Shown piece after piece: positions 4,905 through 34,427 of a stretch of DNA of 64,000 nucleotides. Position numbers and translations under genes: made by a program. How positions within the stretch are numbered: position 1 is the first letter of the stretch; each line of letters starts with the position of its first letter. The notes under the pieces are model-generated. The model ran no database searches. It was not told the origin of the DNA and saw nothing but the letters and a program-made list of their open reading frames with translations. The DNA comes from Styela clava (taxonomy: Eukaryota): assembly GCF_964204865.1 (NCBI RefSeq), contig NC_135252.1, positions 19,840,001 to 19,904,000 of the forward strand, written 5' to 3'.

Positions 4905-6493
4905 CAAGCATATTTGAACAATCAGTGTAAGAGTATGGGATTTACGCATGTTAAATAATCAATAAAATAAGTGAAATCTTGATTAAATATCAGCGGGTGA
5001 CTGAAATGAAAAGTCATTGATGGTATCTCTCTCTTTGTTTTATATTTAGCAATTGAAGTCCAAACTAAACAATGGTGTTTTGTGTTTCTCAGCATTGGAT
5101 GATGCTGACCAGAAAAGTCGTCTGTGAGTCAATTGCAATATATTGATTGTGTTTGTCTGTTGATGACATATCTGGCCATGTATGATCCAACCTTGTGAAT
5201 AACATTAAGTACAAGTGATAAGTTACACAATGAATGAAAGATTTGTAATTGCTCTAAACTTCCTTAATAATCATCCCATGTGGTTCATGTGTCCCGAAGA
5301 AATGAATGAGATAAGATTCTTTGTATTTTCTATAAATGTGGTCATGAAATAGTTTTTCAATGCCAATGACACTGAAGTCTTTAAGTGAATGTCCCGGTTG
5401 GCTGAAATGGGCACCTACAACTAGATCTTTGTTTTGGCTTTTATACTTCTAATATGTTCAGTTATTCTATATTTGAGATGCCTTCCCGTTTCTCCTATGT
5501 ATTGCATTCCACACTTTTTGCAACAAAAATTCCCCACATTCTCCGTGAGGATTTCTGTTGTTTTGGGGAGGAAATACTATACTTTGGTATAGATTTACTT
5601 ATAAAATTAATATAGATAATAAATATATTAATATATATCGATAAATAATATATTAATATAGATGACTTCTGAATTCACCAATTTTCTTTTTTTTCTTAAA
5701 ATCTTCCTTTAACGCTTTGGACTACACTTTCCTGATTTTAAAAAATGTGCTTATATATGCTGCTTATACGAGCACCACCACGCGGGTTTCTACTGTTCAT
5801 TTTTGTCATCTCTTGCTCAACAAACTGCATAGGTTGGCGGTCGGGTATCGGTTATTTTAATTCCATATATTTTAGTGCCTAGATGTGTCGCTATGTAGTA
5901 TAAAATACACCCTTTTATTGCGGACATTCGGGACGTATAAGACCCCCTTTGAGCTGCTAATAAACTAAATGTTCATTCAGACGCCCAATTTATGACTTGT
6001 TGACGTGGACTCGTCTAGAATGTGTACAAAACGTGTATTGGATAAGCAGATTTTGCATCGGTCACAAGCTAGTGTTTTTGTGATGATCGGATGTGCAGAC
6101 TGGGTACTGACGTAGAGCACTTCTCTAACACCATGACTACATAAACAAAAAAACAGGCAGGTTTTCAGCCAGACTTTTTGAAAAATAAAACTTAACAATA
6201 CCCTGCATTATACGTTGATTTATTGAACAATAGTATTTGAGACAAAGGCTGATTATAGCGAGGGATACGGACCCTGTCATTTTCTTCATATTAAGAGCAA
6301 AGTCAGGCTTAAGCAAGTTAAATGATTTTGTATTTTGTATAATTTGTAAATTCGTTATAGCCGATAATTCTTTTAATTATTTATGCTGAATATATACAAA
6401 AATTAAGCAAAATATTTGCATGTTTTCAAAAAGTCTTGACTACGTATACGTGTCTTTGCTGATCCTAAGTTATTTCTTCAATAGATGAATGAC

Positions 6494-8715
6494 TCAATTT
6501 TGCTGGTCTATTTGATCCATCGCCTCCAGAAAATCAAAAACATCCTCGTCTAAAAAGTATTGAATATTGTTAACTATATTATTCTGATTCTACCATAATA
6601 TATCAATTTTACTGAACTTTATGGATGAGAACATCTATTTCTAAATATATATTCTTCAATGACTTCCTTATTTTAGTCGCGCCAAGTTTATAGAAATCTA
6701 CGTAAAAAAATATAAAACAGATATTTCTGGACAGCGAGTAAAAGGGATAAATAAGACTAATGATTGTACTCTTCTATACGGACACAAAAGAGACAGCACA
6801 ATTGCATCCACGTACATTTACACCCGTAAACTGCATCAAGGAAATTTGAACCCGCATATATTTGCACCCACCGACATTTCCACCCATAGATTTTCACAGC
6901 CGCATATAGATTGCACCCGCGAAAATTTTCAACCATGTACATTTGCACCGATGTACATTTGCAATATGTAATTCGAAAAACATACTGAAATCTGAAATAT
7001 TTAACGACACTCAATTTGGAGCATGCTGCTCTAAAGTATTGGGGATGCTTCGGTCAAATGAGTTGTTTGATATCGCGTAAACTCACCGACACTTTCTCCC
7101 GTGTCTGCGCCATCTTGATCGGGGTATTGAATTTCCTCGTCATTTGTCGAACCCTGTATAAAATGTTCCTTTAGGGCAGGGGTGTGCAAACTGCGGCCCG
7201 CGGGCCAAATTCGGCCCGCAAGAAGAAGTTGTGCGGCCCGCGGAGAAATAATAATTTCGAATGGTGTACCCGCAAAGCCCATACCAGTCATATTAGCAAA
7301 ACAAGCTAACAAAATTCTGTTGCAAAATACACGATTCATATTACAAAAACGTGTTTCTCACTGCATTCGTTTGAAGTCGGTGTGACAAAAAATTAAAATA
7401 GCAGTTTCTTCAGAAGTTTATGCGTTTTAAATCTACTATTTCTGCAAGAACCCCTAATAATGCCGTAAGATCAATAGCAAATATAGGCAATTTTTGTGCT
7501 TGCAACTACCAGAAAGCCTAAATTAAATGAAGGTGCGGCCCGCGGCTTCACCCAGTTACTTGTATTTGGCCCGCCAATAAAAAAGGTTGCACACCCCTGC
7601 TTCAGGGTATTTGATGTAATATATTTTATTTTGTCTAAAAATTACGGATATGTCTATACAAGCAACAGATTGTATTATTAAATTTCAAAATGTATATCAA
7701 AGTTTCAATATTGGGATATTTTGACCGTATTTAGGTCAATTTGGAATGATTTAAAAAATTTGCAAATTATGTGGACGAAAGCTGTACTAACTTACAGTAG
7801 TGATGGCAATAATACCCCTAAACTAAAGATGTAGATGCAATATAGAAGGTTACATATCAAGTTTATAGTCATTTTTGAACAAATAAACATCGCATATTAA
7901 TCAGAGGCGTGTATGATTTTTTATGATAATCATTATTCAGTAAGTTAAGAATTTTGTCATAATTATATTGAATAATTGAAGCAATTTTCTTGGATATTTT
8001 AAAAAAATAATTTTTAGTGCTCATAATAGCTGTTTCAATGCCTTCTAATTGACTTCCTAGAAAGAAGAATACAAAAATGACCTTTTGACAATTATACAAT
8101 TTTCACAACTCACCTTGTTGATTATTTCTGGATCTATATATGGTCTCCGAGTCGGTCCAGGTCGCGGGCAACGTGTTTGAGGATATGGGGATCCACCGGG
8201 ACATAACCTTTCGTTATGAAAAAACTTAAATAAAATGTACTTCGAAGATGCAAATAAATTCTTCATTATGAATATCTATAATTATACCTAACTATATGTT
8301 TTTAGAAAACATCTTTGCTTAAATTTTTTATTGTGTTAAACAACCAAAGTAGTAGAGCAATTGGAAGCATACTTTTATGTGTCCAAGCCACATGATTCCT
8401 TCATATTACTTGTAGCCTATTATCGTGACAGTGTAAGTTTTATCACCACAAACAAAATGTCTACTGGATTGCGAAGTGTAAGGTATTTCAATAGGTTACT
8501 CACTTAGGAGGTATTGCCACTCTTCGCCGACTTCTTTTCACATGTTCAATAATTCTTTTGGTAGCCTTGACGATTCTTCTCACCAATTTCACTATTCGTG
8601 GTCTCCATGACACTTTTTTGCGTGTTTTGTCATTTTGCGTTTTCTTGACTGAACTATCAGAAAGTGATGCCATGACCATTGCCACAAGTAACAAACCGAA
8701 AAAGATAGACTTCAT
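6494..8715 (-). CDS. Antimicrobial-peptide-like prepropeptide gene A (142 aa): signal peptide, cationic helix, Pro/Cys module, anionic C-terminal propiece
   Basis: Exons 8715-8504, 8207-8114, 7153-7087, 6549-6494, all GT-AG, phases 2,0,1, frame continuous. Protein: MKSIFFGLLLVAMVMASLSDSSVKKTQNDKTRKKVSWRPRIVKLVRRIVKATKRIIEHVKRSRRRVAIPPKLCPGGSPYPQTRCPRPGPTRRPYIDPEIINKGSTNDEEIQYPDQDGADTGESVDEDVFDFLEAMDQIDQQN*. The ORF-track stop at 8500 lies inside the GTGAGT donor. Every exon has a counterpart in gene B. Confidence 0.85.
6798..6965. repeat. ACATTTGCACCC-type minisatellite in intron 3 of gene A
   Basis: About 10 degenerate 15-17-bp units, paralogous to 11335-11515. Confidence 0.8.
7177..7599. 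mobile_element. hAT-type MITE in intron 2 of gene A
   Basis: TIR CAGGGGTGTGCAA/TTGCACACCCCTG, 8-bp TSD CTTTAGGG/CTTCAGGG, GCGGCCCG subterminal motifs. Confidence 0.85.
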
Positions 8716-8907
8716 GGTGGTATATTGAATCACGTTTACAGTTTATAATGTTTATGCGATGATCTGTTGGTTAACCAGATTAAATAATAAGTTATGCTGT
8801 TTTTCACGACTATTATCTAGCACCATTCATTACCAACGAAAACATACTTTTGATTCTGTATTTGCAGTTCTTACGCAAGATTATCTGTCACAATCAAAGC
8901 ATTAAAA

Positions 8908-9030
8908 AGCACTGATGCTTCTGAAGTAATCATCAAACAAACTTAAGTTTATATAAAGAAGACCAAACAAGGAAAGCAAAAAAAGAAAAAGAAAAATGCG
9001 CACCGCTCCTTTTTACGTGAATCACATGCA
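8908..9030 (-). promoter_or_regulatory. Putative promoter of gene A (TATA box and conserved upstream blocks)
   Basis: TATATAAA on minus strand at 8948-8955. Blocks AAGCACTGATGCTTCT, GCGCACCGCTC and TGAATCA occur in the same order upstream of gene B. Confidence 0.5.
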
Positions 9031-10117
9031 TTCTATAAGAATGTTAAAATTAACGATAATTTTAATGTAATTGTATTTTATTGAGTTTTATATTACCGAG
9101 TACGCTGATAATGTGACAGAGTTCGCGTATCGGCCATTCTATCAATGTATACAATAGAGGTATTCATAATTTACACAGATATATTGCTGTATTTAACCTT
9201 GTCGATCGCTACTTGATATGTTCGCTTGTACAATAACTCTGATTGGGGTTATAGGATGTCCTGGATATAACCTGGCGATAATATTGTTGATAACTATTAC
9301 CTCCATAACCTGTTACTGACAGGCTGTAAGAGCACGATTGTCACCAGGTATATTCATATCGTTTTAGTAAGAGTTTTGTATAAATACCAATCCCCAGTAA
9401 GCGGTCAAAAGTACGGCAGTTCTATTATAAATACTCAAATACCTCATTTTCAATATATTGAACAATCACAAACGTTCGCTCACTCCCCACGGGCTATAAA
9501 AGATGATGACATTGCTGTGAGAATACTTCATTGTTATAAGGGAAGGAAGCTATACCGACTTATGAATGTTCAGTACGAAGCCATTAAAATGTCAATAACA
9601 GGTTATGCTGAGGAAGAATAAAGGACAACCGGTGTTACCAATTCGATGTAATTTGCTGACATTTTGAACTTCTATACAGAACCTCACATAGATATAATTT
9701 TTTTTTTGCTAAAAAAAAATTAATATTCATTGATATGAGGAGTTGAATTTGAAATACACGAATCACAATTCGTAGATGAGAATTGTCTTTAACTTTTGCT
9801 TTTGTTTGTTTATACCCATTTCAGTACAATATATTATTAGATTATATTTCAATTTGATCATATGTTACCGATGAAATTATATGTTCCTCTGACTTTCAAA
9901 ATAGAAATTATTGATAAATAGCGTGTACATAAAGTCTCTTTTCAATTAACAAAAAAATATTGCGAAGTGAAATGATGAGATATGAGGGTTGTTTTATGTT
10001 AATCGGTATTTCATAAAGTTTTTATTGACACTAAAATTTGTTGTTTCAGATAAAATTTATTAATTAAATTTCTTATGTTTAATGATTGAATTATATGAAC
10101 CGAACCCCAATAAAATC

Positions 10118-10312
10118 ACTACTGCTCAAGAAAAAGCGCAGTGTGTATCCTGGTTCACTGAGACAAAATTATATGTTCATACCAAGCGAAAGTATATAGA
10201 CGTAAGAATGGAAGAGACACACCATCACTTCCTTCAATTGGTTTAGGGCACAATAAATTTATGGAGACAGGGACAAGTGTTTGGTATAAGGAGGAGCGGG
10301 TGACCAAGAGTT
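10118..10312 (+). mobile_element. Degenerate Tc1/mariner transposase N-terminal (HTH) fragment
   Basis: Translates, with frameshifts, TAQEKAQCVSWFTETK..GRDTPSLPSI..HNKFMETG..RSG*PR. Confidence 0.65.
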
Positions 10313-10869
10313 CAGAGTATCAGTCGCTGCCGTGATCAGGCGAAAATGTCAAAAAACAAAATAAATTTATGCAGCCATTAAATTTTTCTTTTATAAATCA
10401 TATTATTTTAAAATTAAATAAAAAAAAAATAAAAACCCATCAAATCTTTTTATATTTAACGACATGTTAAAGCACAGAGTTTGTAAAGCACGTAAGTTTG
10501 GCCCATCAAGGGGCTTTTCAGTAGTTCGCATGAATCTATTCTTGGAATGTCGTGATAATTAGCAAAACCGTACTTGCTCCTTCTTTTAGAGGTTAGATGA
10601 GGGGTGGGCAAAGTTTTTGGACCAGGGGCCAAATATTTTGCCCACCTAGACTGGCGGGTCATGTAAGTGTGACGTAAGAGGTTACATTGTGTGAAAAATA
10701 TTTACAGTGTTACAAAAGCAAAAGTTGGAAACGATAATCCTCGCGCCAAAACTAAAATTAATAGCAACCTCAACAAATTCCTTGAGCTTTTTTCAGCCAA
10801 AACATCAAAAGTTTTAGTTTGGTTTTGGTTATTTTCTTCATGTACTAAGCAAAGTCAATTGACACACAG

Positions 10870-11655
10870 ATTAAATGATTTTATATCATATATATTTTGT
10901 AAATGCGTTATACTCAATAATCCTTTCGATTACTCTTGCTGAATATATACAAAGAATATATATCACTTTCTTTGCTGATGTCTAAGTTACTTCATCAATA
11001 GATGAATGACTCAATTTTGCTGGTCTATTTGATCCATCGCCTCCAGAAAATCAAAAACATCCTCGTCTAAAAAGTAATAAATATTTAATTATATTTTTTA
11101 ATTCTATTATAATATTTTAATTTGATGGCTATTTTACTGAACTTCATAGCTGAGAACACTTATTTCCAAATATATATTCTTCAATGACTTCATTATTTTA
11201 GTCGCGCCAAGTTTATAGAAATTTAAAACAGATTAAATTTAAAAAATTTAAAACAGATGATTCTGGACAGCGAGTAAAAAGGGTAAAAAGAAACAACGAT
11301 TGCACTCTTCTATACCGACACAAAGGGGACAGCACAATTGCACCCACGTACATTTGCACCCGTTAGCTGCACCCAAGACATTTGCACCTGCATACATTTG
11401 CATCCACCGACATTTGAACCCGTACATTTCCACCCATAGAATTTAACACTCGCGAAAATTTGCACCCATGTACATTTGCACCATATGGACGTTTGCACCC
11501 ATGTACATTTGCAATATGTAATCTGTTTTTGACGAATATAGTGAAACCTGAAATATTTAACGACACTTAGTTTGGAAAACGCTAAGATAATGGCGATGGT
11601 CGAATGAGTTGTTTGGTACCGCAGGTAAACTCACCAAAACTCTCTCCCGTGTCTA
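10870..11655 (-). pseudogene. Truncated third copy of the gene A/B family (3' half of exon 3, intron 3, last exon, 3' UTR)
   Basis: Last exon 11066-11011 matches gene A 6549-6494. Flanks parallel 6320-7108, including the intronic minisatellite. Homology stops mid-exon 3 at about 11655. Confidence 0.8.
11335..11515. repeat. ACATTTGCACCC-type minisatellite in the truncated gene copy
   Basis: About 11 degenerate units; it produces the spurious Cys-rich ORFs at 11248-11566. Confidence 0.8.
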
Positions 11656-12150
11656 GCGCTTACTCGCCATCCCTAATATTCAACGAAGCAGCGTGAAGCT
11701 AATCTCCATCCACCCACCATATAATAATCTGCCAAAAAAGCTGAGGCAAAAGCTGGTTATACGATTTCGCGGATTTTCCAATGTTCAATTTCGTCGTTTT
11801 TGTCGCCGTGATGCTGACTTTTATGCCTACAGTATTTTGTTTTGGCATTTCAGTCCTAGGCTGATTCAAAAGGAGAGCTTCGGCCTATGCCGCAAAAGTA
11901 CTGACGGACTGTTCTTATATATTAAGATCAACAATTATCACACAGGTAAATATTTTTATATTGTGCATATATAACAGTATAATATATTTTCTAAATCAAT
12001 TGTGCCCAATATATAAACGGTCGACCACTATAAATTTGCTATGTATATCTAAAAACAGGAATTATAATAATTTTTAACGTTTTAAAAAAGACTTGATTAA
12101 ATATATAATTATCCTTGGAGGGTAAATTTTTTCTTCACTGGATGAATCAT

Positions 12151-14049
12151 TTAATTTTGTTGGTCCATTTCATCCATCGCCTCCAAAAAATCGAAAACAT
12201 CTTCATCTGAAAAAATGGTAAATTTTGGTGCCAAGTTAGCAACGACTTTATCATTGTGATATAGATAAATTTATGAACATATTTATTTCGCAAAGAATTA
12301 TAAAACAAATATTTCTAAACAGCGAAAAAATCTACATTTTCTTGTCGACTAGCTCGGTAGCTGAATCATTTCGCATGAGCCAAATTTCGGATATTCTCTA
12401 GCTCGCAAAATCGTTCGGAAATAAAAAAAAAATTATGCAATATTCAAAGATCAAAGGACGCAAAATTTTGTCACATTTTGCTTAACCAAAAGGTAGGCTG
12501 GCAGCTATAAAGGCAGTGATGATTAGCAAAAGGCCCGTTAAACTCACCCTGACTCTCTGCCATGTCTGCGCCATTTTGATCGTTGTATTGAATTTCTTCG
12601 TCACCTCTCGAACCCTGTATAGTAATGTTGTATTTGGGGTTTCATGTGATATATCTTCTATCGTCTAATTAATGCGGATTTGGCTATATATGGTCAACAA
12701 ATCGTGTTTTTTATTTGAAAATGTGGATTTATGTTTAAATGTTAAAATCTACATATTTCCATCGATGTAAAGCAAATCATTGTATGCTACGTAGGTTATT
12801 GAAATCCATGTATTTGTATCAATTTCGAATAAATTAATATTTTTGTGATTAACATATAGTTTGCGCAAATAAAAAAAAAAGCTTGCAAAAGCGATTTCAG
12901 TTTTAAAGATGTATTGACATTATTACAATCAAACTAAAAAATCATATATATACAAAATTAGTGACACATTTTGTGGACATTTTTCAATTAAATATACAAA
13001 TCACACCGTAATCATAGGCTGCATATATGGCAATCACAATTCTGATAATCGTTCTTCGACGGATGAAAAATTGTGCTCTAATTATATTGAGCAATTGAAA
13101 TAATTTTTTGAGATGCTTTTAAAAACATTTAGAATAAAAATAAAATAACTTCTTGAATTAATAGGAGAAAAAAAAATTAGGTTGCTGTAATATTTGTTTC
13201 AAAAACAAATCAAATTACTTAATCTTAAATAAGCTATGGGAAACATACCGTGATACTTGGATATGGCTTCACGAACGGTGGAGGTGGACAACGTGTGTAA
13301 TGATATGGGTATCTGCCGGGAATGCATATCCTGTGAAAATGTCAAATAACTAAATTGAATAAAATTTATTTGTCATATATTTGGAAAATCATTTATATAT
13401 TTATGTTTTTTTTTATTAGATGGTATGCTAGGAACTGATATTTTGGGAAAGAGTATCCAGCTCGGCATTGTCTACCTAATTCAAACCTCGAGTGAGGCCG
13501 TGGGCATGGGTTTTGAACAAAGTCGTGTAACTTGCGATGCCAACAAGTGAAGTCTAACAATTTAGCCGCTTGGCCATCGCGCATAAAGAAAATAAATGAA
13601 ATTATTAAGATATGGAATCGCCCATTGTATAAAACAAGTTTTTTTTTTTTGTAAAATACCTGAAATATTGATTATATTTGAAAAGTTTCTTCGATAAATA
13701 AAAAGTTTGCGTTTCAAGTACTGCAATTTAAAGTGCGAATGCCACAGCGTTTATTCGTGGTAACTTGTAAGACATTATCAAAATTAGAGTTATCACAACA
13801 AACACTATTTGTATTGAACTACGAAGCGTAAATAGATAATAGATAATATAAAGGTCACCTAAAAGGTGTTCTCCGTCTATTTCTCCTGGCGTAATCAATC
13901 CCTCTTTTGGTTAGCTTAAAAACTCTCCACCACAATCGCCATGACAACTTTTTTGGTGCTTTGCCTCTTTGCGTTTTCTTGACTGAACTTTCAGAAAGTG
14001 ATGCCATGACCATCGCGACAAGTAACAAACCGAAAAAGATATACTTCAT
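12151..14049 (-). CDS. Antimicrobial-peptide-like prepropeptide gene B (131 aa), paralogue of gene A
   Basis: Exons 14049-13859, 13330-13249, 12614-12548, 12206-12151, GT-AG, phases 2,0,1. Protein: MKYIFFGLLLVAMVMASLSESSVKKTQRGKAPKKLSWRLWWRVFKLTKRGIDYARRNRRRTPFRICIPGRYPYHYTRCPPPPFVKPYPSITGSRGDEEIQYNDQNGADMAESQDEDVFDFLEAMDEMDQQN*. Exons 3 and 4 have the same lengths as in gene A (67 and 56 nt). Confidence 0.85.
13425..13582 (-). mobile_element. tRNA-derived SINE-like fragment in intron 1 of gene B
   Basis: A box TGGCCAAGCGG and degenerate B box GTTCAAAACC. Confidence 0.45.
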
Positions 14050-14541
14050 GGTGTTATATTGAAACACGTTTACAGTATATATATATATATAAAGATTATA
14101 TAATAATCTGTCCACAAAGCGGATTGAAATATTAGTTATGCTGCTTTTAATCACCATGTTACTTTAATTTACACACGCGAAAATTTAATATTAGGAATAG
14201 TTGCGCTAAAAATACCTACTCAGCAAAAGTTATTGCTGTATTAGAAAACAAATCATGTTGATTTTTGCACCGCAAATATTGAGTCGCTTTTAGTATGCTG
14301 CTTTTTATCCATATAGTATTTTTATATTACTCCTATGAAAAATCTAAATATACAAATAAGAATGCTAGCGCTGTATCAAATGCCCAAGAGCGATAGTTTT
14401 AACTATAAAAAAATATCTTGTTGTTCTTGGTAAAGTTTATCGCCAATAAAACGCAATTTAAAATTTGATATAAGTTACATCATGCATTCATAGTTGTTAA
14501 CAAGTCATTAAATAAAAAAAAATATCAATCGTAACACCTAA

Positions 14542-32799: not shown

Positions 32800-34427
32800 A
32801 TGAACTCGAAGGTTATTGTTTTCATCGCACTGGTGGCAATGCTTGCTGTCGATAACACCCAAGGGTGGAAGTGGTGGAAAAAGGCGGTGAAAACAGCCAA
32901 AAAAATTTGGAACCATCCGTGAGTTCTCATATTTAACTTTATGAAAACACAAGAAACAATCACATGAATTAAATTTCACTTGGAAAGTTGATTTATTTTT
33001 AAAAATCAACGTAAAACGTATCCTTTCATTCCAATTCCGAATCTATATATTTTCTTTTATTTCATACATGGGTGGCAATTTATGAATATTACTTGACAAT
33101 AAAAAAAAAAACTTTATTTCGAATATATTCTACTCTTAAGTCTACCACAATAAGGTACATAGAAAGTTATAAGCCATATATTTTTTTCAGTGTCACCAAA
33201 GGAATAAGAAAAGCGTTTAAAAATTGGGATGCAATTACAGCATTGAGAGAGATGGTAAAAAATTAATAAATTCTCAGACAAATAATGTATCGTATGGATA
33301 TTATTACGCGTGTTTGAGTAATTTACATTTGTAGATAGTGTACAACTACCTATATCTATACTATCTATATAACTATCTATAAATGTTTTTTTTAAACTAG
33401 AAATGCTAAAATATATGGACACACAGACCAAAGCGAAGTAGTATCAAATATTCTACAGTCGCAGTAGTCTGATCACCGTATTGTTGAGTTACCACACAAA
33501 ACTTCAAAATGAAAAACGAGTCTCTTAGAACCCCAAAAAAATTTGAAATAAGTATAAGTAATAGCCTTTCAACGACAATCTTAAACCACTAAAAAAATTC
33601 AAATCAATTGGTTCAGTAAATGAAGATGAAGTTTTTTTTTTCCACAATGGCAGTATCAGCAAGATGGAAAAGAAAAACACTAACAACATAATAACAAAAC
33701 TAATGATATGTTTACTTCGTTTTCAACAATTCCCAGTTTATACCTTTTTGAAAAAAAGAAGAAAGTATTTGCCGTAGCCGAATATTTATTATGTATTTCT
33801 TGTATTATTCTTCCAACATTCAATACACCGTACTCCAAATTCACTTTGGCAATATTTCCATTTCAGAACGACTATGAGTACGAGAGCATAATGGAAAAAG
33901 TGAGAGACGATCTTGAAGATGATTATACCGAGAATGAACTTGATGAGCTTTTTGATGCCGTCAACCGAATCAGAGGATTGAGTGAAGGTAAATTCTATAT
34001 ATAATTGGTCGAATATCTCACGTCATCTATTATTAAACAGGCGGATAAACTGCAGACTGACATACTTCCAGGTCTTACTTTAGTCTTACTGAGAAGTTCT
34101 CAGATAATTCTTGATGGTGCATGATTTGTTAAATAGAACTAATTTCGCTCCGAGCTAATGTTTATTAATCCTACGCTGTTTTGTCGCACTTTTGACTGTG
34201 CTCATGAAATATATCATTACATATCCCTTATATCATTGAGCAAAAAATTGATAGCAAGGCACAGTTTACTAAACCTGTGAAGTAAAACAAAAATTCTGAC
34301 TAACTATCTTCTAATTGCAGACAATTTCATGGCTCTCAAGCTGATGACCGATGGAGTTGATTTTAACGATCAAGTTGACGCAAGCGATGTTGCCAAGGCT
34401 TTCGCCCGCAGTTTGTTGAGCCAGTAG
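32800..34427 (+). CDS. Styelin/clavanin-type antimicrobial prepropeptide gene E (136 aa) with Trp/Lys-rich amphipathic region and long acidic propiece
   Basis: Exons 32800-32918, 33191-33254, 33867-33987, 34321-34427, GT-AG, phases 2,0,1. Protein: MNSKVIVFIALVAMLAVDNTQG-WKWWKKAVKTAKKIWNHPVTKGIRKAFKNWDAITALREMNDYEYESIMEKVRDDLEDDYTENELDELFDAVNRIRGLSEDNFMALKLMTDGVDFNDQVDASDVAKAFARSLLSQ*. Also TATA near 32181, a non-coding first exon with GTAAGT donor near 32263, acceptor at 32790 and AATAAA near 34489. Confidence 0.88.

What the first reader, a model, noticed from the sequence alone, without database searches (positions are those of the whole stretch)
6494..14049. Tandem family of two-module antimicrobial-like precursors missed by the ORF track (genes A and B)
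Seen: each precursor has a signal, a short spacer ending in KK, a very cationic amphipathic segment (SWRPRIVKLVRRIVKATKRII.. / SWRLWWRVFKLTKRGI..), a polybasic furin-type site (RSRRR / RNRRR), an exon-encoded Pro/Tyr-rich module with two Cys (CPGGSPYPQTRC / CIPGRYPYHYTRC) and an acidic tail ending DEDVFDFLEAMD..DQQN. Known: styelin and clavanin precursors have a signal/cationic/anionic layout, but I know of none with this Cys-loop Pro-rich module. Inference: a probably undescribed family releasing two different peptides from one precursor.
Basis: partly seen in the sequence, partly recalled or inferred. Interest (0 to 1): 0.85.

Follow-up and report, generated by a model that had tools for sequence, protein, structure and literature searches.

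The report
Orphan two-module defence-peptide gene pair

Summary
On the minus strand lie two paralogous four-exon genes. Gene A spans 8715-6494 and encodes 142 aa; gene B spans 14049-12151 and encodes 131 aa. All introns are GT-AG, with phases 2-0-1 in both genes. My spliced models are identical to NCBI proteins LOC144420819 and LOC144420872 of Styela clava, so the genes were missed only by the scan's ORF track.

Each precursor has these parts in order:
- a signal peptide;
- a 15-aa basic spacer;
- an amphipathic cationic helix;
- an R-x-R-R-R site;
- a basic Pro/Tyr-rich module encoded by exon 2, with one conserved Cys pair;
- a 40-aa acidic tail.

dN/dS between the copies is 0.38 (bootstrap 0.22-0.63), so both are under constraint. 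The family is an orphan: it has only these two genes plus a 3' fragment in the 377-Mb genome, and nothing in 1.84 billion representative proteins, Pfam, PDB, the Atlas or papers.

The genes share the four-exon design and intron phases of styelin/botryllin-type genes, one of which lies 19 kb away. Sequence kinship is only suggestive, and clavanin genes are built differently.

Antimicrobial function and release of two peptides are plausible but untested. RNA reads could not be consulted.

The scan noted this same stretch once more (s1-823088), and many other AMP-like clusters elsewhere in this genome.

The parts
8504..8715 (-). Gene A exon 1. Encodes the signal (aa 1-19), a basic spacer ending in KK (20-34), a cationic amphipathic segment (35-60), RSRRR (61-65) and VAIPP(K). 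Ends in phase 2 at the donor GTGAGT.
   Evidence: Helix 38-66 in the AF2 model. Hydrophobic moment 0.62, shuffle p 0.009.
8114..8207 (-). Gene A exon 2. Encodes the basic Pro/Tyr-rich module LCPGGSPYPQTRCPRPGPTRRPYIDPEIINK, with Cys73 and Cys84.
   Evidence: A exon 2 against B exon 2 gives z 5.6.
7087..7153 (-). Gene A exon 3. Encodes the first half of the acidic tail (GSTNDEEIQYPDQDGADTGESV). Ends in phase 1.
   Evidence: 81% nucleotide identity to B exon 3.
6494..6549 (-). Gene A exon 4. Encodes the acidic amphipathic C-terminus (D)EDVFDFLEAMDQIDQQN plus the TGA stop.
   Evidence: Helix 125-141 in the AF2 model.
13859..14049 (-). Gene B exon 1. Encodes the signal, spacer, Trp-rich cationic segment LSWRLWWRVFKLTKRGIDYAR, RNRRR and TPF(R). 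Ends in phase 2.
13249..13330 (-). Gene B exon 2. Encodes the module ICIPGRYPYHYTRCPPPPFVKPYPSIT, with Cys66 and Cys78.
12548..12614 (-). Gene B exon 3. Encodes GSRGDEEIQYNDQNGADMAESQ.
12151..12206 (-). Gene B exon 4. Encodes (D)EDVFDFLEAMDEMDQQN plus the TAA stop.
8716..8747 (-). Conserved 32-nt leader of gene A, with a TATA-like motif and the start context CCACCATG. It belongs to a block 90% identical to gene B's counterpart.
   Evidence: The promoter role is inferred.
14050..14081 (-). Conserved 32-nt leader of gene B, with a TATA run upstream and the start context ACACCATG.
   Evidence: The promoter role is inferred.
10828..11659 (-). Fragment C, a partial duplicate of gene A's 3' end. Its exon-4 copy (11011-11066) is 100% identical to A's. 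Its exon-3 remnant carries an in-frame TAA. No exons 1-2 are present.

Best explanation
Genes A and B are a species- or lineage-restricted pair of functional Styela clava genes. They encode secreted host-defence-type prepropeptides.

Shown:
- The gene models and their identity to the RefSeq proteins.
- Purifying selection on both copies.
- The orphan status of the family.
- The domain layout: a signal peptide, a cationic amphipathic helix (net +8 in A, +5 in B), a basic module with one conserved Cys pair, and an acidic tail (-14 in A, -13 in B).
- The same four-exon, phase 2-0-1 design as the styelin/botryllin-type genes of this genome.

Inferred:
- The precursor enters the secretory pathway and is stored in haemocyte granules, with the acidic tail partly masking the cationic parts.
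- A furin-type convertase cuts at R-x-R-R|R. This frees the N-terminal helix, which acts on microbial membranes as styelins and clavanins do.
- The C-terminal piece carries the disulfide-closed Pro/Tyr-rich loop. It may be trimmed from the acidic tail at the conserved Gly that opens exon 3, as happens at the Gly-acidic junction of styelins and clavanins. It would then serve as a second effector or as a substrate for Tyr modification.
- The family most likely arose from a styelin/botryllin-type ancestor. Exon 2 and the end of exon 1 were remodelled, while the signal and tail were kept.
For: Gene structure and database identity:
- Canonical splice sites and identical phases in both copies.
- Models identical to NCBI proteins of Styela clava.

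Selection:
- dN/dS is 0.38, range 0.22-0.63.
- The signal is 95% identical in nucleotides. The central part is diverged with indels (dS about 1). The tail is 83% identical.

Peptide properties:
- The hydrophobic moment of the cationic segments is 0.62 and 0.58, against 0.54 for clavanin A. Shuffle p values are 0.009 and 0.022.
- AF2 predicts helices at 2-19, 38-66 and 125-141 and disorder elsewhere.
- Inside the otherwise variable module 2, the residues C, P, G, P, Y, T, R, C, P are conserved.

Links to styelin-type genes:
- The intron phases 2-0-1 and the four-exon plan match the botryllin-type gene L013 and gene D, which lies 19 kb away. Styelin D-like has phases 2-0-0.
- Gene A's tail against the styelin D tail gives z 3.5, p 0.007. 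A's exon 4 aligns without gaps to DEEFQDFMKEVEQ.
- A styelin-type profile scores A above all 1000 segment-wise decoys.

Literature:
- Furin is reported in ascidian morula-cell granules, and botryllin is processed there from a pre-propeptide (PMC9966394).
- Furin-separated double products are established for insect AMP genes such as Drosocin/Buletin (PMC9233930).
Against: - There is no expression, peptide or activity evidence.
- Sequence kinship with styelin-type genes is weak. Exon 1 gives z 1.3-1.6, against z 8 for true members. Gene B's tail gives p 0.21 and B's profile score gives p 0.12. Exon 2 shows no similarity.
- The spacer after the signal is basic rather than acidic, and its KK is only a possible cleavage site.
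- There is no Gly amidation signal before the polybasic site.
- Poly-Arg runs lie inside the presumed mature peptides of botryllin-type paralogs, so RSRRR may not be cleaved.
- Module 2 has no basic site before the tail.
- The precursor stays net +7 (A) or +6 (B), so the tail does not neutralise it.
- dN/dS is below 1 in every region, so diversifying selection is not demonstrated.
Confidence: 0.55

Rival explanations
1. The genes make one two-domain mature peptide rather than two peptides. The R-x-R-R-R run is part of the cationic peptide and is not cut. The product is a helix joined to a Pro/Tyr-rich disulfide loop, comparable in design to penaeidins or arasin. It is freed only from the acidic tail.
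For: - Poly-Arg runs occur within the presumed mature peptides of botryllin-type paralogs in this genome.
- AF2 runs the helix through the site, at residues 38-66.
- Styelin and clavanin precursors lose their acidic tails at a Gly-acidic junction without basic residues. Both A and B have a Gly at the start of exon 3.
Against: - R-S-R-R|R and R-N-R-R|R both fit the furin consensus R-X-K/R-R, and this five-residue run is conserved (4 of 5 residues) while its flanks vary.
- Intron 1 separates the two parts into different exons.
Confidence: 0.2
2. The genes encode a hormone- or neuropeptide-type precursor. The bioactive product would be the disulfide-looped peptide released after the polybasic site, and the cationic helix and acidic tail would be pro-regions.
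For: - The layout is a signal peptide, a polybasic convertase site and a conserved Cys-x10/11-Cys loop with conserved PG, PY and TRCP residues.
- A Gly follows the module and could act as an amidation signal.
Against: - There is no dibasic site at the C-terminal side of the loop.
- The loop region is variable between the paralogs (13 of 30 identical, with indels), which is unusual for receptor ligands.
- No relatives exist in other organisms.
- The neighbour 19 kb away and the gene design are of the styelin type.
Confidence: 0.08
3. The genes encode a secreted Tyr/Pro/Lys-rich substrate for phenoloxidase-driven cross-linking in the tunic, in clotting or in wound repair. The cationic helix would serve to bind surfaces.
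For: - Module 2 has 27-29% Pro, 2-4 Tyr and basic residues.
- Styelin D carries DOPA and other modifications.
- The botryllin authors propose DOPA peptides as phenoloxidase substrates.
Against: - The module is short, is not repetitive and holds only 2-4 Tyr.
- No similarity to known DOPA proteins was found.
- This reading is pure inference.
Confidence: 0.07
4. The genes are predicted but are not meaningfully expressed or functional. They would be decaying duplicates or an annotation artefact.
For:
- Each protein is on record from a single contig only.
- A decayed third copy lies between the two genes.
Against: - Both reading frames are intact, with all 12 splice sites canonical.
- dN/dS is 0.38, with no bootstrap replicate at or above 1.
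- The leader and start context are conserved.
- NCBI's pipeline independently produced the same models.
Confidence: 0.05

Closest known systems
Styelins (Styela clava) and botryllin-type precursors (Botryllus schlosseri botryllin; paralog clusters in this genome)
   Same: - The layout is signal, then cationic peptide, then acidic C-terminal propiece.
- The genes have four exons, with intron 1 in phase 2 and intron 2 in phase 0. Intron 3 is in phase 1 in the botryllin-type genes and in gene D.
- The acidic tail carries a DE[DE]..DF[LM] motif like styelin D's DEEFQDFM.
- A clear member, gene D, lies 19 kb away.
   Different: - A basic 15-aa spacer lies between the signal and the cationic segment.
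- There is no KHK motif and no Gly amidation signal after the helix.
- An R-x-R-R-R site ends exon 1.
- Exon 2 encodes a Pro/Tyr-rich Cys-loop unrelated to styelin exon 2.
- Exon 1 similarity is not significant (z 1.3-1.6, against 8 for members).
- HMMER finds no link.
Clavanins / clavaspirin (Styela clava)
   Same: - The organism is the same.
- The layout is a signal, a short piece before the peptide, an amphipathic helical peptide and an acidic tail. The hydrophobic moments are comparable.
   Different: - Clavanin genes have a signal exon plus a single exon that holds the anionic propiece, the 23-aa His/Phe-rich peptide, a Gly and the tail. A and B have four exons.
- There is no sequence similarity.
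- The spacer in A and B is basic, not anionic.
Insect polypeptide AMP genes with furin-separated products (Drosocin/Buletin, Attacin C/MPAC, Baramicin, apidaecin)
   Same: One precursor carries a canonical R-X-K/R-R site between two dissimilar modules. The second product is Pro-rich or anionic (PMC9233930; PMC9246212).
   Different: These genes are unrelated in sequence and taxon. In those cases both products were detected by mass spectrometry, whereas here nothing has been detected. The similarity is one of working principle only.
Two-domain Pro-rich/Cys-containing AMPs of crustaceans (penaeidins, arasin) and linear proline-rich AMPs
   Same: A basic, Pro-rich stretch (PRPGPTRRPY in A) is combined with disulfide-bonded Cys. 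This comparison rests on my own knowledge and was not tested.
   Different: Those peptides have 4-6 Cys, or none in the linear proline-rich AMPs, whereas module 2 has a single Cys-x10/11-Cys loop. No sequence match was found in Pfam or PDB.

Membership tests
Styelin/botryllin-type prepropeptides | Significant sequence similarity of the signal plus the N-terminal mature peptide (exon 1) | tested here: not met
   Local-alignment z is 1.3-1.6 (p 0.08-0.12) for A and B against styelin D exon 1. The botryllin-type gene and gene D give z 8.0-8.2. HMMER profile search finds only the query family.
Styelin/botryllin-type prepropeptides | Four-exon gene with intron 1 in phase 2 and intron 2 in phase 0 before the acidic tail | tested here: met
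   Phases are 2-0-1 in A and B, 2-0-1 in the botryllin-type gene L013 and gene D, and 2-0-0 in the styelin D-like gene. The chance of a 2-0-1 match is roughly 1 in 27 to 1 in 30 (my estimate).
Styelin/botryllin-type prepropeptides | Mature cationic peptide directly after the signal, KHK motif, and a Gly amidation signal before the acidic propiece | tested here: not met
   A and B have a 15-aa basic spacer, no KHK and no Gly before RSRRR/RNRRR.
Styelin/botryllin-type prepropeptides | Acidic C-terminal propiece related in sequence (DEEFQ[DE]F[ML] motif) | tested here: inconclusive
   A's tail against styelin D's tail gives p 0.007, and B's gives p 0.21. Against the botryllin-type gene and gene D the p values are above 0.3.
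Clavanins | Signal exon plus a single exon encoding the anionic propiece, a 23-aa His/Phe-rich peptide, Gly and the tail | tested here: not met
   The clavanin loci L029 and L030 show that structure. A and B have four exons and no His/Phe-rich peptide.
Furin-processed polypeptide AMP precursors (a functional class) | Canonical R-X-K/R-R site between two modules | tested here: met
   R-S-R-R|R in A and R-N-R-R|R in B, conserved between the paralogs.
Furin-processed polypeptide AMP precursors (a functional class) | Both products demonstrated as separate peptides | not testable with these tools
   This needs peptidomics.
Antimicrobial peptides in general | Measured antimicrobial or membrane activity | not testable with these tools
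   Only physico-chemical proxies are available: net charge +8 and +5, hydrophobic moment 0.62 and 0.58.

The most novel reading that the evidence does not exclude
A single sea-squirt precursor delivers two mechanistically different host-defence peptides. One is a membrane-active cationic helix. The other is a disulfide-looped, Pro/Tyr-rich peptide, possibly DOPA-modified and amidated, that is cut apart from the helix by furin. This would be the first furin-separated polypeptide AMP gene described in tunicates, arising by exon remodelling of a styelin-type gene.
Probability: 0.2. Interest if true: 0.7.

Novelty: new variant of a known kind. Interest (0 to 1): 0.45.

Why it matters
Tunicates are the sister group of vertebrates. 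Their known gene-encoded antimicrobials (styelins, clavanins, botryllin) are simple precursors yielding one peptide each.

An orphan pair adds a conserved disulfide-looped Pro/Tyr module behind a furin-type site. If that holds up, it shows how new effector modules are grafted onto an old precursor design. It also offers two new peptide scaffolds for testing in high salt, where styelin-type peptides work.

The value is tempered in two ways. Function and expression are untested. And this genome carries many other uncharacterised AMP-like clusters.

Tried and rejected
Searches that led nowhere:
- A word-based protein search with gene A's exon 1 alone found nothing, because of the length window. 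Repeating it with gene B's longer ORF plus the region option gave the two NCBI proteins.
- The HMMER profile of A+B against 1.84e9 representatives returned only the query family.
- Pfam gave no real hit; the SIT match at E 0.19 is the signal peptide.
- PDB gave only chance hits at E above 0.1.
- The ESM Atlas gave no usable hit.
- A metagenome scan found 600 pattern matches, none confirmed.
- No paper holds the peptide strings or the LOC ids, and no Styela clava genome-wide AMP survey was found.
- In the own genome the family comprises only A, B and fragment C.

Readings rejected:
- Clavanin kinship is rejected on gene structure.
- Homology of the acidic tail with botryllin-type tails does not exceed composition.
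- Exon 2 has no similarity to styelin-type exon 2.
- Positive selection on the variable region is not supported; dN/dS is 0.34-0.62 there.

Handling of sequences:
- I sent no joined spliced model as typed letters to any search. Searches used single exons by reference or the database proteins P0001 and P0002. Joined models of the other genes were used only inside scripts, for pairwise statistics.
- Two short peptides were typed as genome queries. Clavanin A came from a paper. Styelin D came from memory, and the genome hit it produced stands on its own.


Full report
**What is there.** Reading the minus strand of window 6300-14300 shows two small genes of the same build. Splice contexts and exact coordinates are as follows.

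| Gene | Exon 1 | Exon 2 | Exon 3 | Exon 4 | Protein |
|---|---|---|---|---|---|
| A | 8715-8504 | 8207-8114 | 7153-7087 | 6549-6494 | 142 aa |
| B | 14049-13859 | 13330-13249 | 12614-12548 | 12206-12151 | 131 aa |

All six introns are GT..AG, and their phases are 2, 0, 1 in both genes. The Cys-containing Pro/Tyr-rich module is exactly exon 2.

**Identity of the genome and of the genes.** A word-based protein search with gene A's exon 1 alone was blank. The cause was the tool's length window. Using gene B's longer ORF with the region option returned two NCBI proteins:
- 'uncharacterized protein LOC144420872 [Styela clava]', 131 aa;
- 'uncharacterized protein LOC144420819 [Styela clava]', 142 aa.

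Their sequences are identical to my spliced models. So the genes are real enough for NCBI's pipeline to have modelled them the same way. They were 'missed' only by the scan's ORF track. I sent no joined, typed model to any search. Searches used single exons by reference, or these two database proteins.

**Evidence that the genes are functional.**
- Between A and B the exons align and most intron sequence does not.
- dN/dS over 130 aligned codons is 0.38. The bootstrap 95% range is 0.22-0.63, and no replicate reached 1.
- The pattern is uneven along the gene. The signal is 95% identical in nucleotides (dS 0.18). That 90% block extends 32 nt upstream of the ATG, with TATA-like motifs and a CCACC/ACACC start context.
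- The cationic segment and module 2 are strongly diverged with indels (dS about 1, dN/dS 0.34-0.62). The tail is 83% identical.
- This confirms the 'variable core between conserved ends' picture, which was also noted as s1-823088. It does not demonstrate positive selection.

**Anatomy of the products.**
- Residues 1-19 are a classical signal peptide.
- Residues 20-34 are a basic spacer (SSVKKTQ..KK).
- Next comes a cationic segment. Its net charge is +8 in A and +5 in B (B has three Trp). The helical hydrophobic moment is 0.62 and 0.58, with shuffle p of 0.009 and 0.022. Clavanin A scores 0.54 on the same scale.
- Next comes R-S-R-R-R in A and R-N-R-R-R in B, which fit the furin consensus R-X-K/R-R.
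- Module 2 follows. It is 37 aa in A and 31 aa in B, net +4, with 27-29% Pro and 2-4 Tyr. It has one Cys pair, spaced by 10 residues in A and 11 in B. The residues C, P, G, P, Y, T, R, C, P are conserved inside an otherwise variable stretch.
- Last comes a 40-aa acidic tail (-14 in A, -13 in B).
- AlphaFold2, run on a two-sequence alignment with a mean pLDDT of only 54, gives helices at 2-19, 38-66 and 125-141 and disorder elsewhere.
- The whole precursor stays net +7 (A) or +6 (B).

**How widespread is it?**
- In the 377-Mb assembly there are only A, B and a fragment C.
- Fragment C (10828-11659) copies A's 3' end. Its exon-4 copy is 100% identical to A's. Its exon-3 remnant carries an in-frame TAA. 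It has no exons 1-2.
- A profile of A+B found nothing else among 1.84 billion representative proteins.
- Pfam, PDB, the ESM Atlas and a metagenome scan were blank.
- No paper holds the peptides or the LOC ids.
- The family is therefore an orphan as far as these tools can see. Other tunicate genomes could not be searched.

**Relation to known Styela peptides.** I rebuilt comparison genes from this genome.

*Clavanins.*
- Clavanin A's sequence, taken from a paper, finds two genes on contig C1.
- Each has a signal exon plus one exon holding the propiece, peptide, Gly and tail.
- That is a different gene structure with no similarity, so membership is rejected.

*Styelin-type genes.*
That gene encodes an 81-aa precursor with the layout described in the literature. 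It has four exons in phases 2-0-0.
- A botryllin-type gene in the C3:16.19 Mb cluster (L013; compare s1-810828) also has four exons in phases 2-0-1.
- Both are clearly styelin kin. Their exon 1 gives z of about 8 against styelin D and z 12.9 against each other.

*Where A and B stand.*
- A and B share this four-exon, 2-0-1 design, and gene D is only 19 kb away.
- At sequence level the link is only suggestive:
  - exon 1 gives z 1.3-1.6;
  - the signal alone gives p 0.01-0.03;
  - A's tail against styelin D's tail gives z 3.5 (p 0.007), with an ungapped match of DEDVFDFLEAMDQ to DEEFQDFMKEVEQ;
  - B's tail gives p 0.21;
  - exon 2 shows no similarity.
- A three-sequence styelin-type profile scores A above all 1000 layout-preserving decoys. 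It scores B at only p 0.12, and the match is mainly the signal.
- I therefore treat common descent from a styelin-type gene as likely but unproven, and I do not file A and B as members.

**How it most likely works.**

*Shown:* the genes encode constrained secretory proteins with a cationic amphipathic helix, a polybasic site, a conserved one-disulfide Pro/Tyr module and an acidic tail.

*Inferred:*
- The precursor is stored in haemocyte granules.
- A furin-type enzyme cuts at R-x-R-R|R. Furin is reported in ascidian morula-cell granules, where botryllin is processed (PMC9966394).
- Cleavage releases the helix as a membrane-active peptide.
- The remaining piece carries the loop. Both genes place a Gly right after it, at the first codon of exon 3. 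Styelin and clavanin precursors are cut at a Gly-acidic junction without basic residues. The loop could therefore be freed and amidated in the same way.
- Its Tyr residues are candidates for the DOPA-type modifications known from styelin D.
- Furin-separated double products are well documented for insect AMP genes such as Drosocin/Buletin (PMC9233930). This is an analogy of principle only.

**Rivals.**
- *One two-domain peptide, site not cut.* Poly-Arg runs sit inside the presumed mature peptides of botryllin-type paralogs, and the predicted helix runs through the site.
- *A hormone-type precursor whose product is the loop.* The variability of the loop and the orphan status speak against this.
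- *A phenoloxidase cross-linking substrate.*
- *A non-expressed prediction.* The dN/dS value, the intact splice sites and the conserved leader speak against this.

**Limits.**
- All function is inferred.

**Verdict.** I rate it a new variant of a known kind, namely tunicate cationic-peptide/acidic-propiece precursors. Interest is moderate, because this genome holds many other uncharacterised AMP-like clusters and nothing has been tested here.

Noticed in passing
window 32800-34427 (+); exons 32800-32918, 33191-33254, 33867-33987, 34321-34427: Gene D is a 136-aa, four-exon precursor with phases 2-0-1 and a WKWWKK.. cationic peptide. It is clear styelin/botryllin-type kin: its exon 1 gives z 8.2 against styelin D and z 12.9 against a botryllin-type gene. 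A word search of the large protein set with its exon 3 found nothing, so it may be unannotated.
   Followed up: partly
window 10828-11659 (-): Fragment C is a partial duplicate of gene A's 3' end, lying downstream of gene B. Its exon-4 copy (11011-11066) plus about 20 nt are 100% identical to A's, while the flanks are about 75-90% identical. Its exon-3 remnant is broken by a TAA. The cause could be gene conversion or use as an alternative terminal exon; this is undecided.
   Followed up: partly
window 7176-7600: A MITE-like insertion of about 425 bp with 17-nt terminal inverted repeats (GCAGGGGTGTGCAAACT) sits in intron 2 of gene A. It ends only 22 nt upstream of the exon-3 acceptor. It is absent from gene B.
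   Followed up: partly
window 6844-6920 and 11334-11513: A 16-nt tandem repeat (ACATTTGCACCCACGT) lies in intron 3 of gene A. It is expanded to about 11.6 copies in fragment C.
   Followed up: no
L032 1435-2922 (G000:C10:16312433-16313920): A styelin D-like gene has four exons in phases 2-0-0 and encodes an 81-aa precursor. Intron 1 splits the mature peptide, and the acidic tail starts at exon 3 with TDEEFQDFM.
   Followed up: partly
L029 and L030 (G000:C1:10574722 and 10538332): Two clavanin genes lie about 36 kb apart. Each has a signal exon plus one exon encoding ..KSEEEK, the 23-aa peptide, Gly and the tail DDQQDNGKFY.HYAEDNGKHWYDTGDQ.
   Followed up: partly
G000:C3:16189217-16236358 (L018-L027): At least ten copies of the botryllin-type acidic exon 3 (81-100% identical) lie within 47 kb on the same chromosome, 3.6 Mb from the window.
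   Followed up: no
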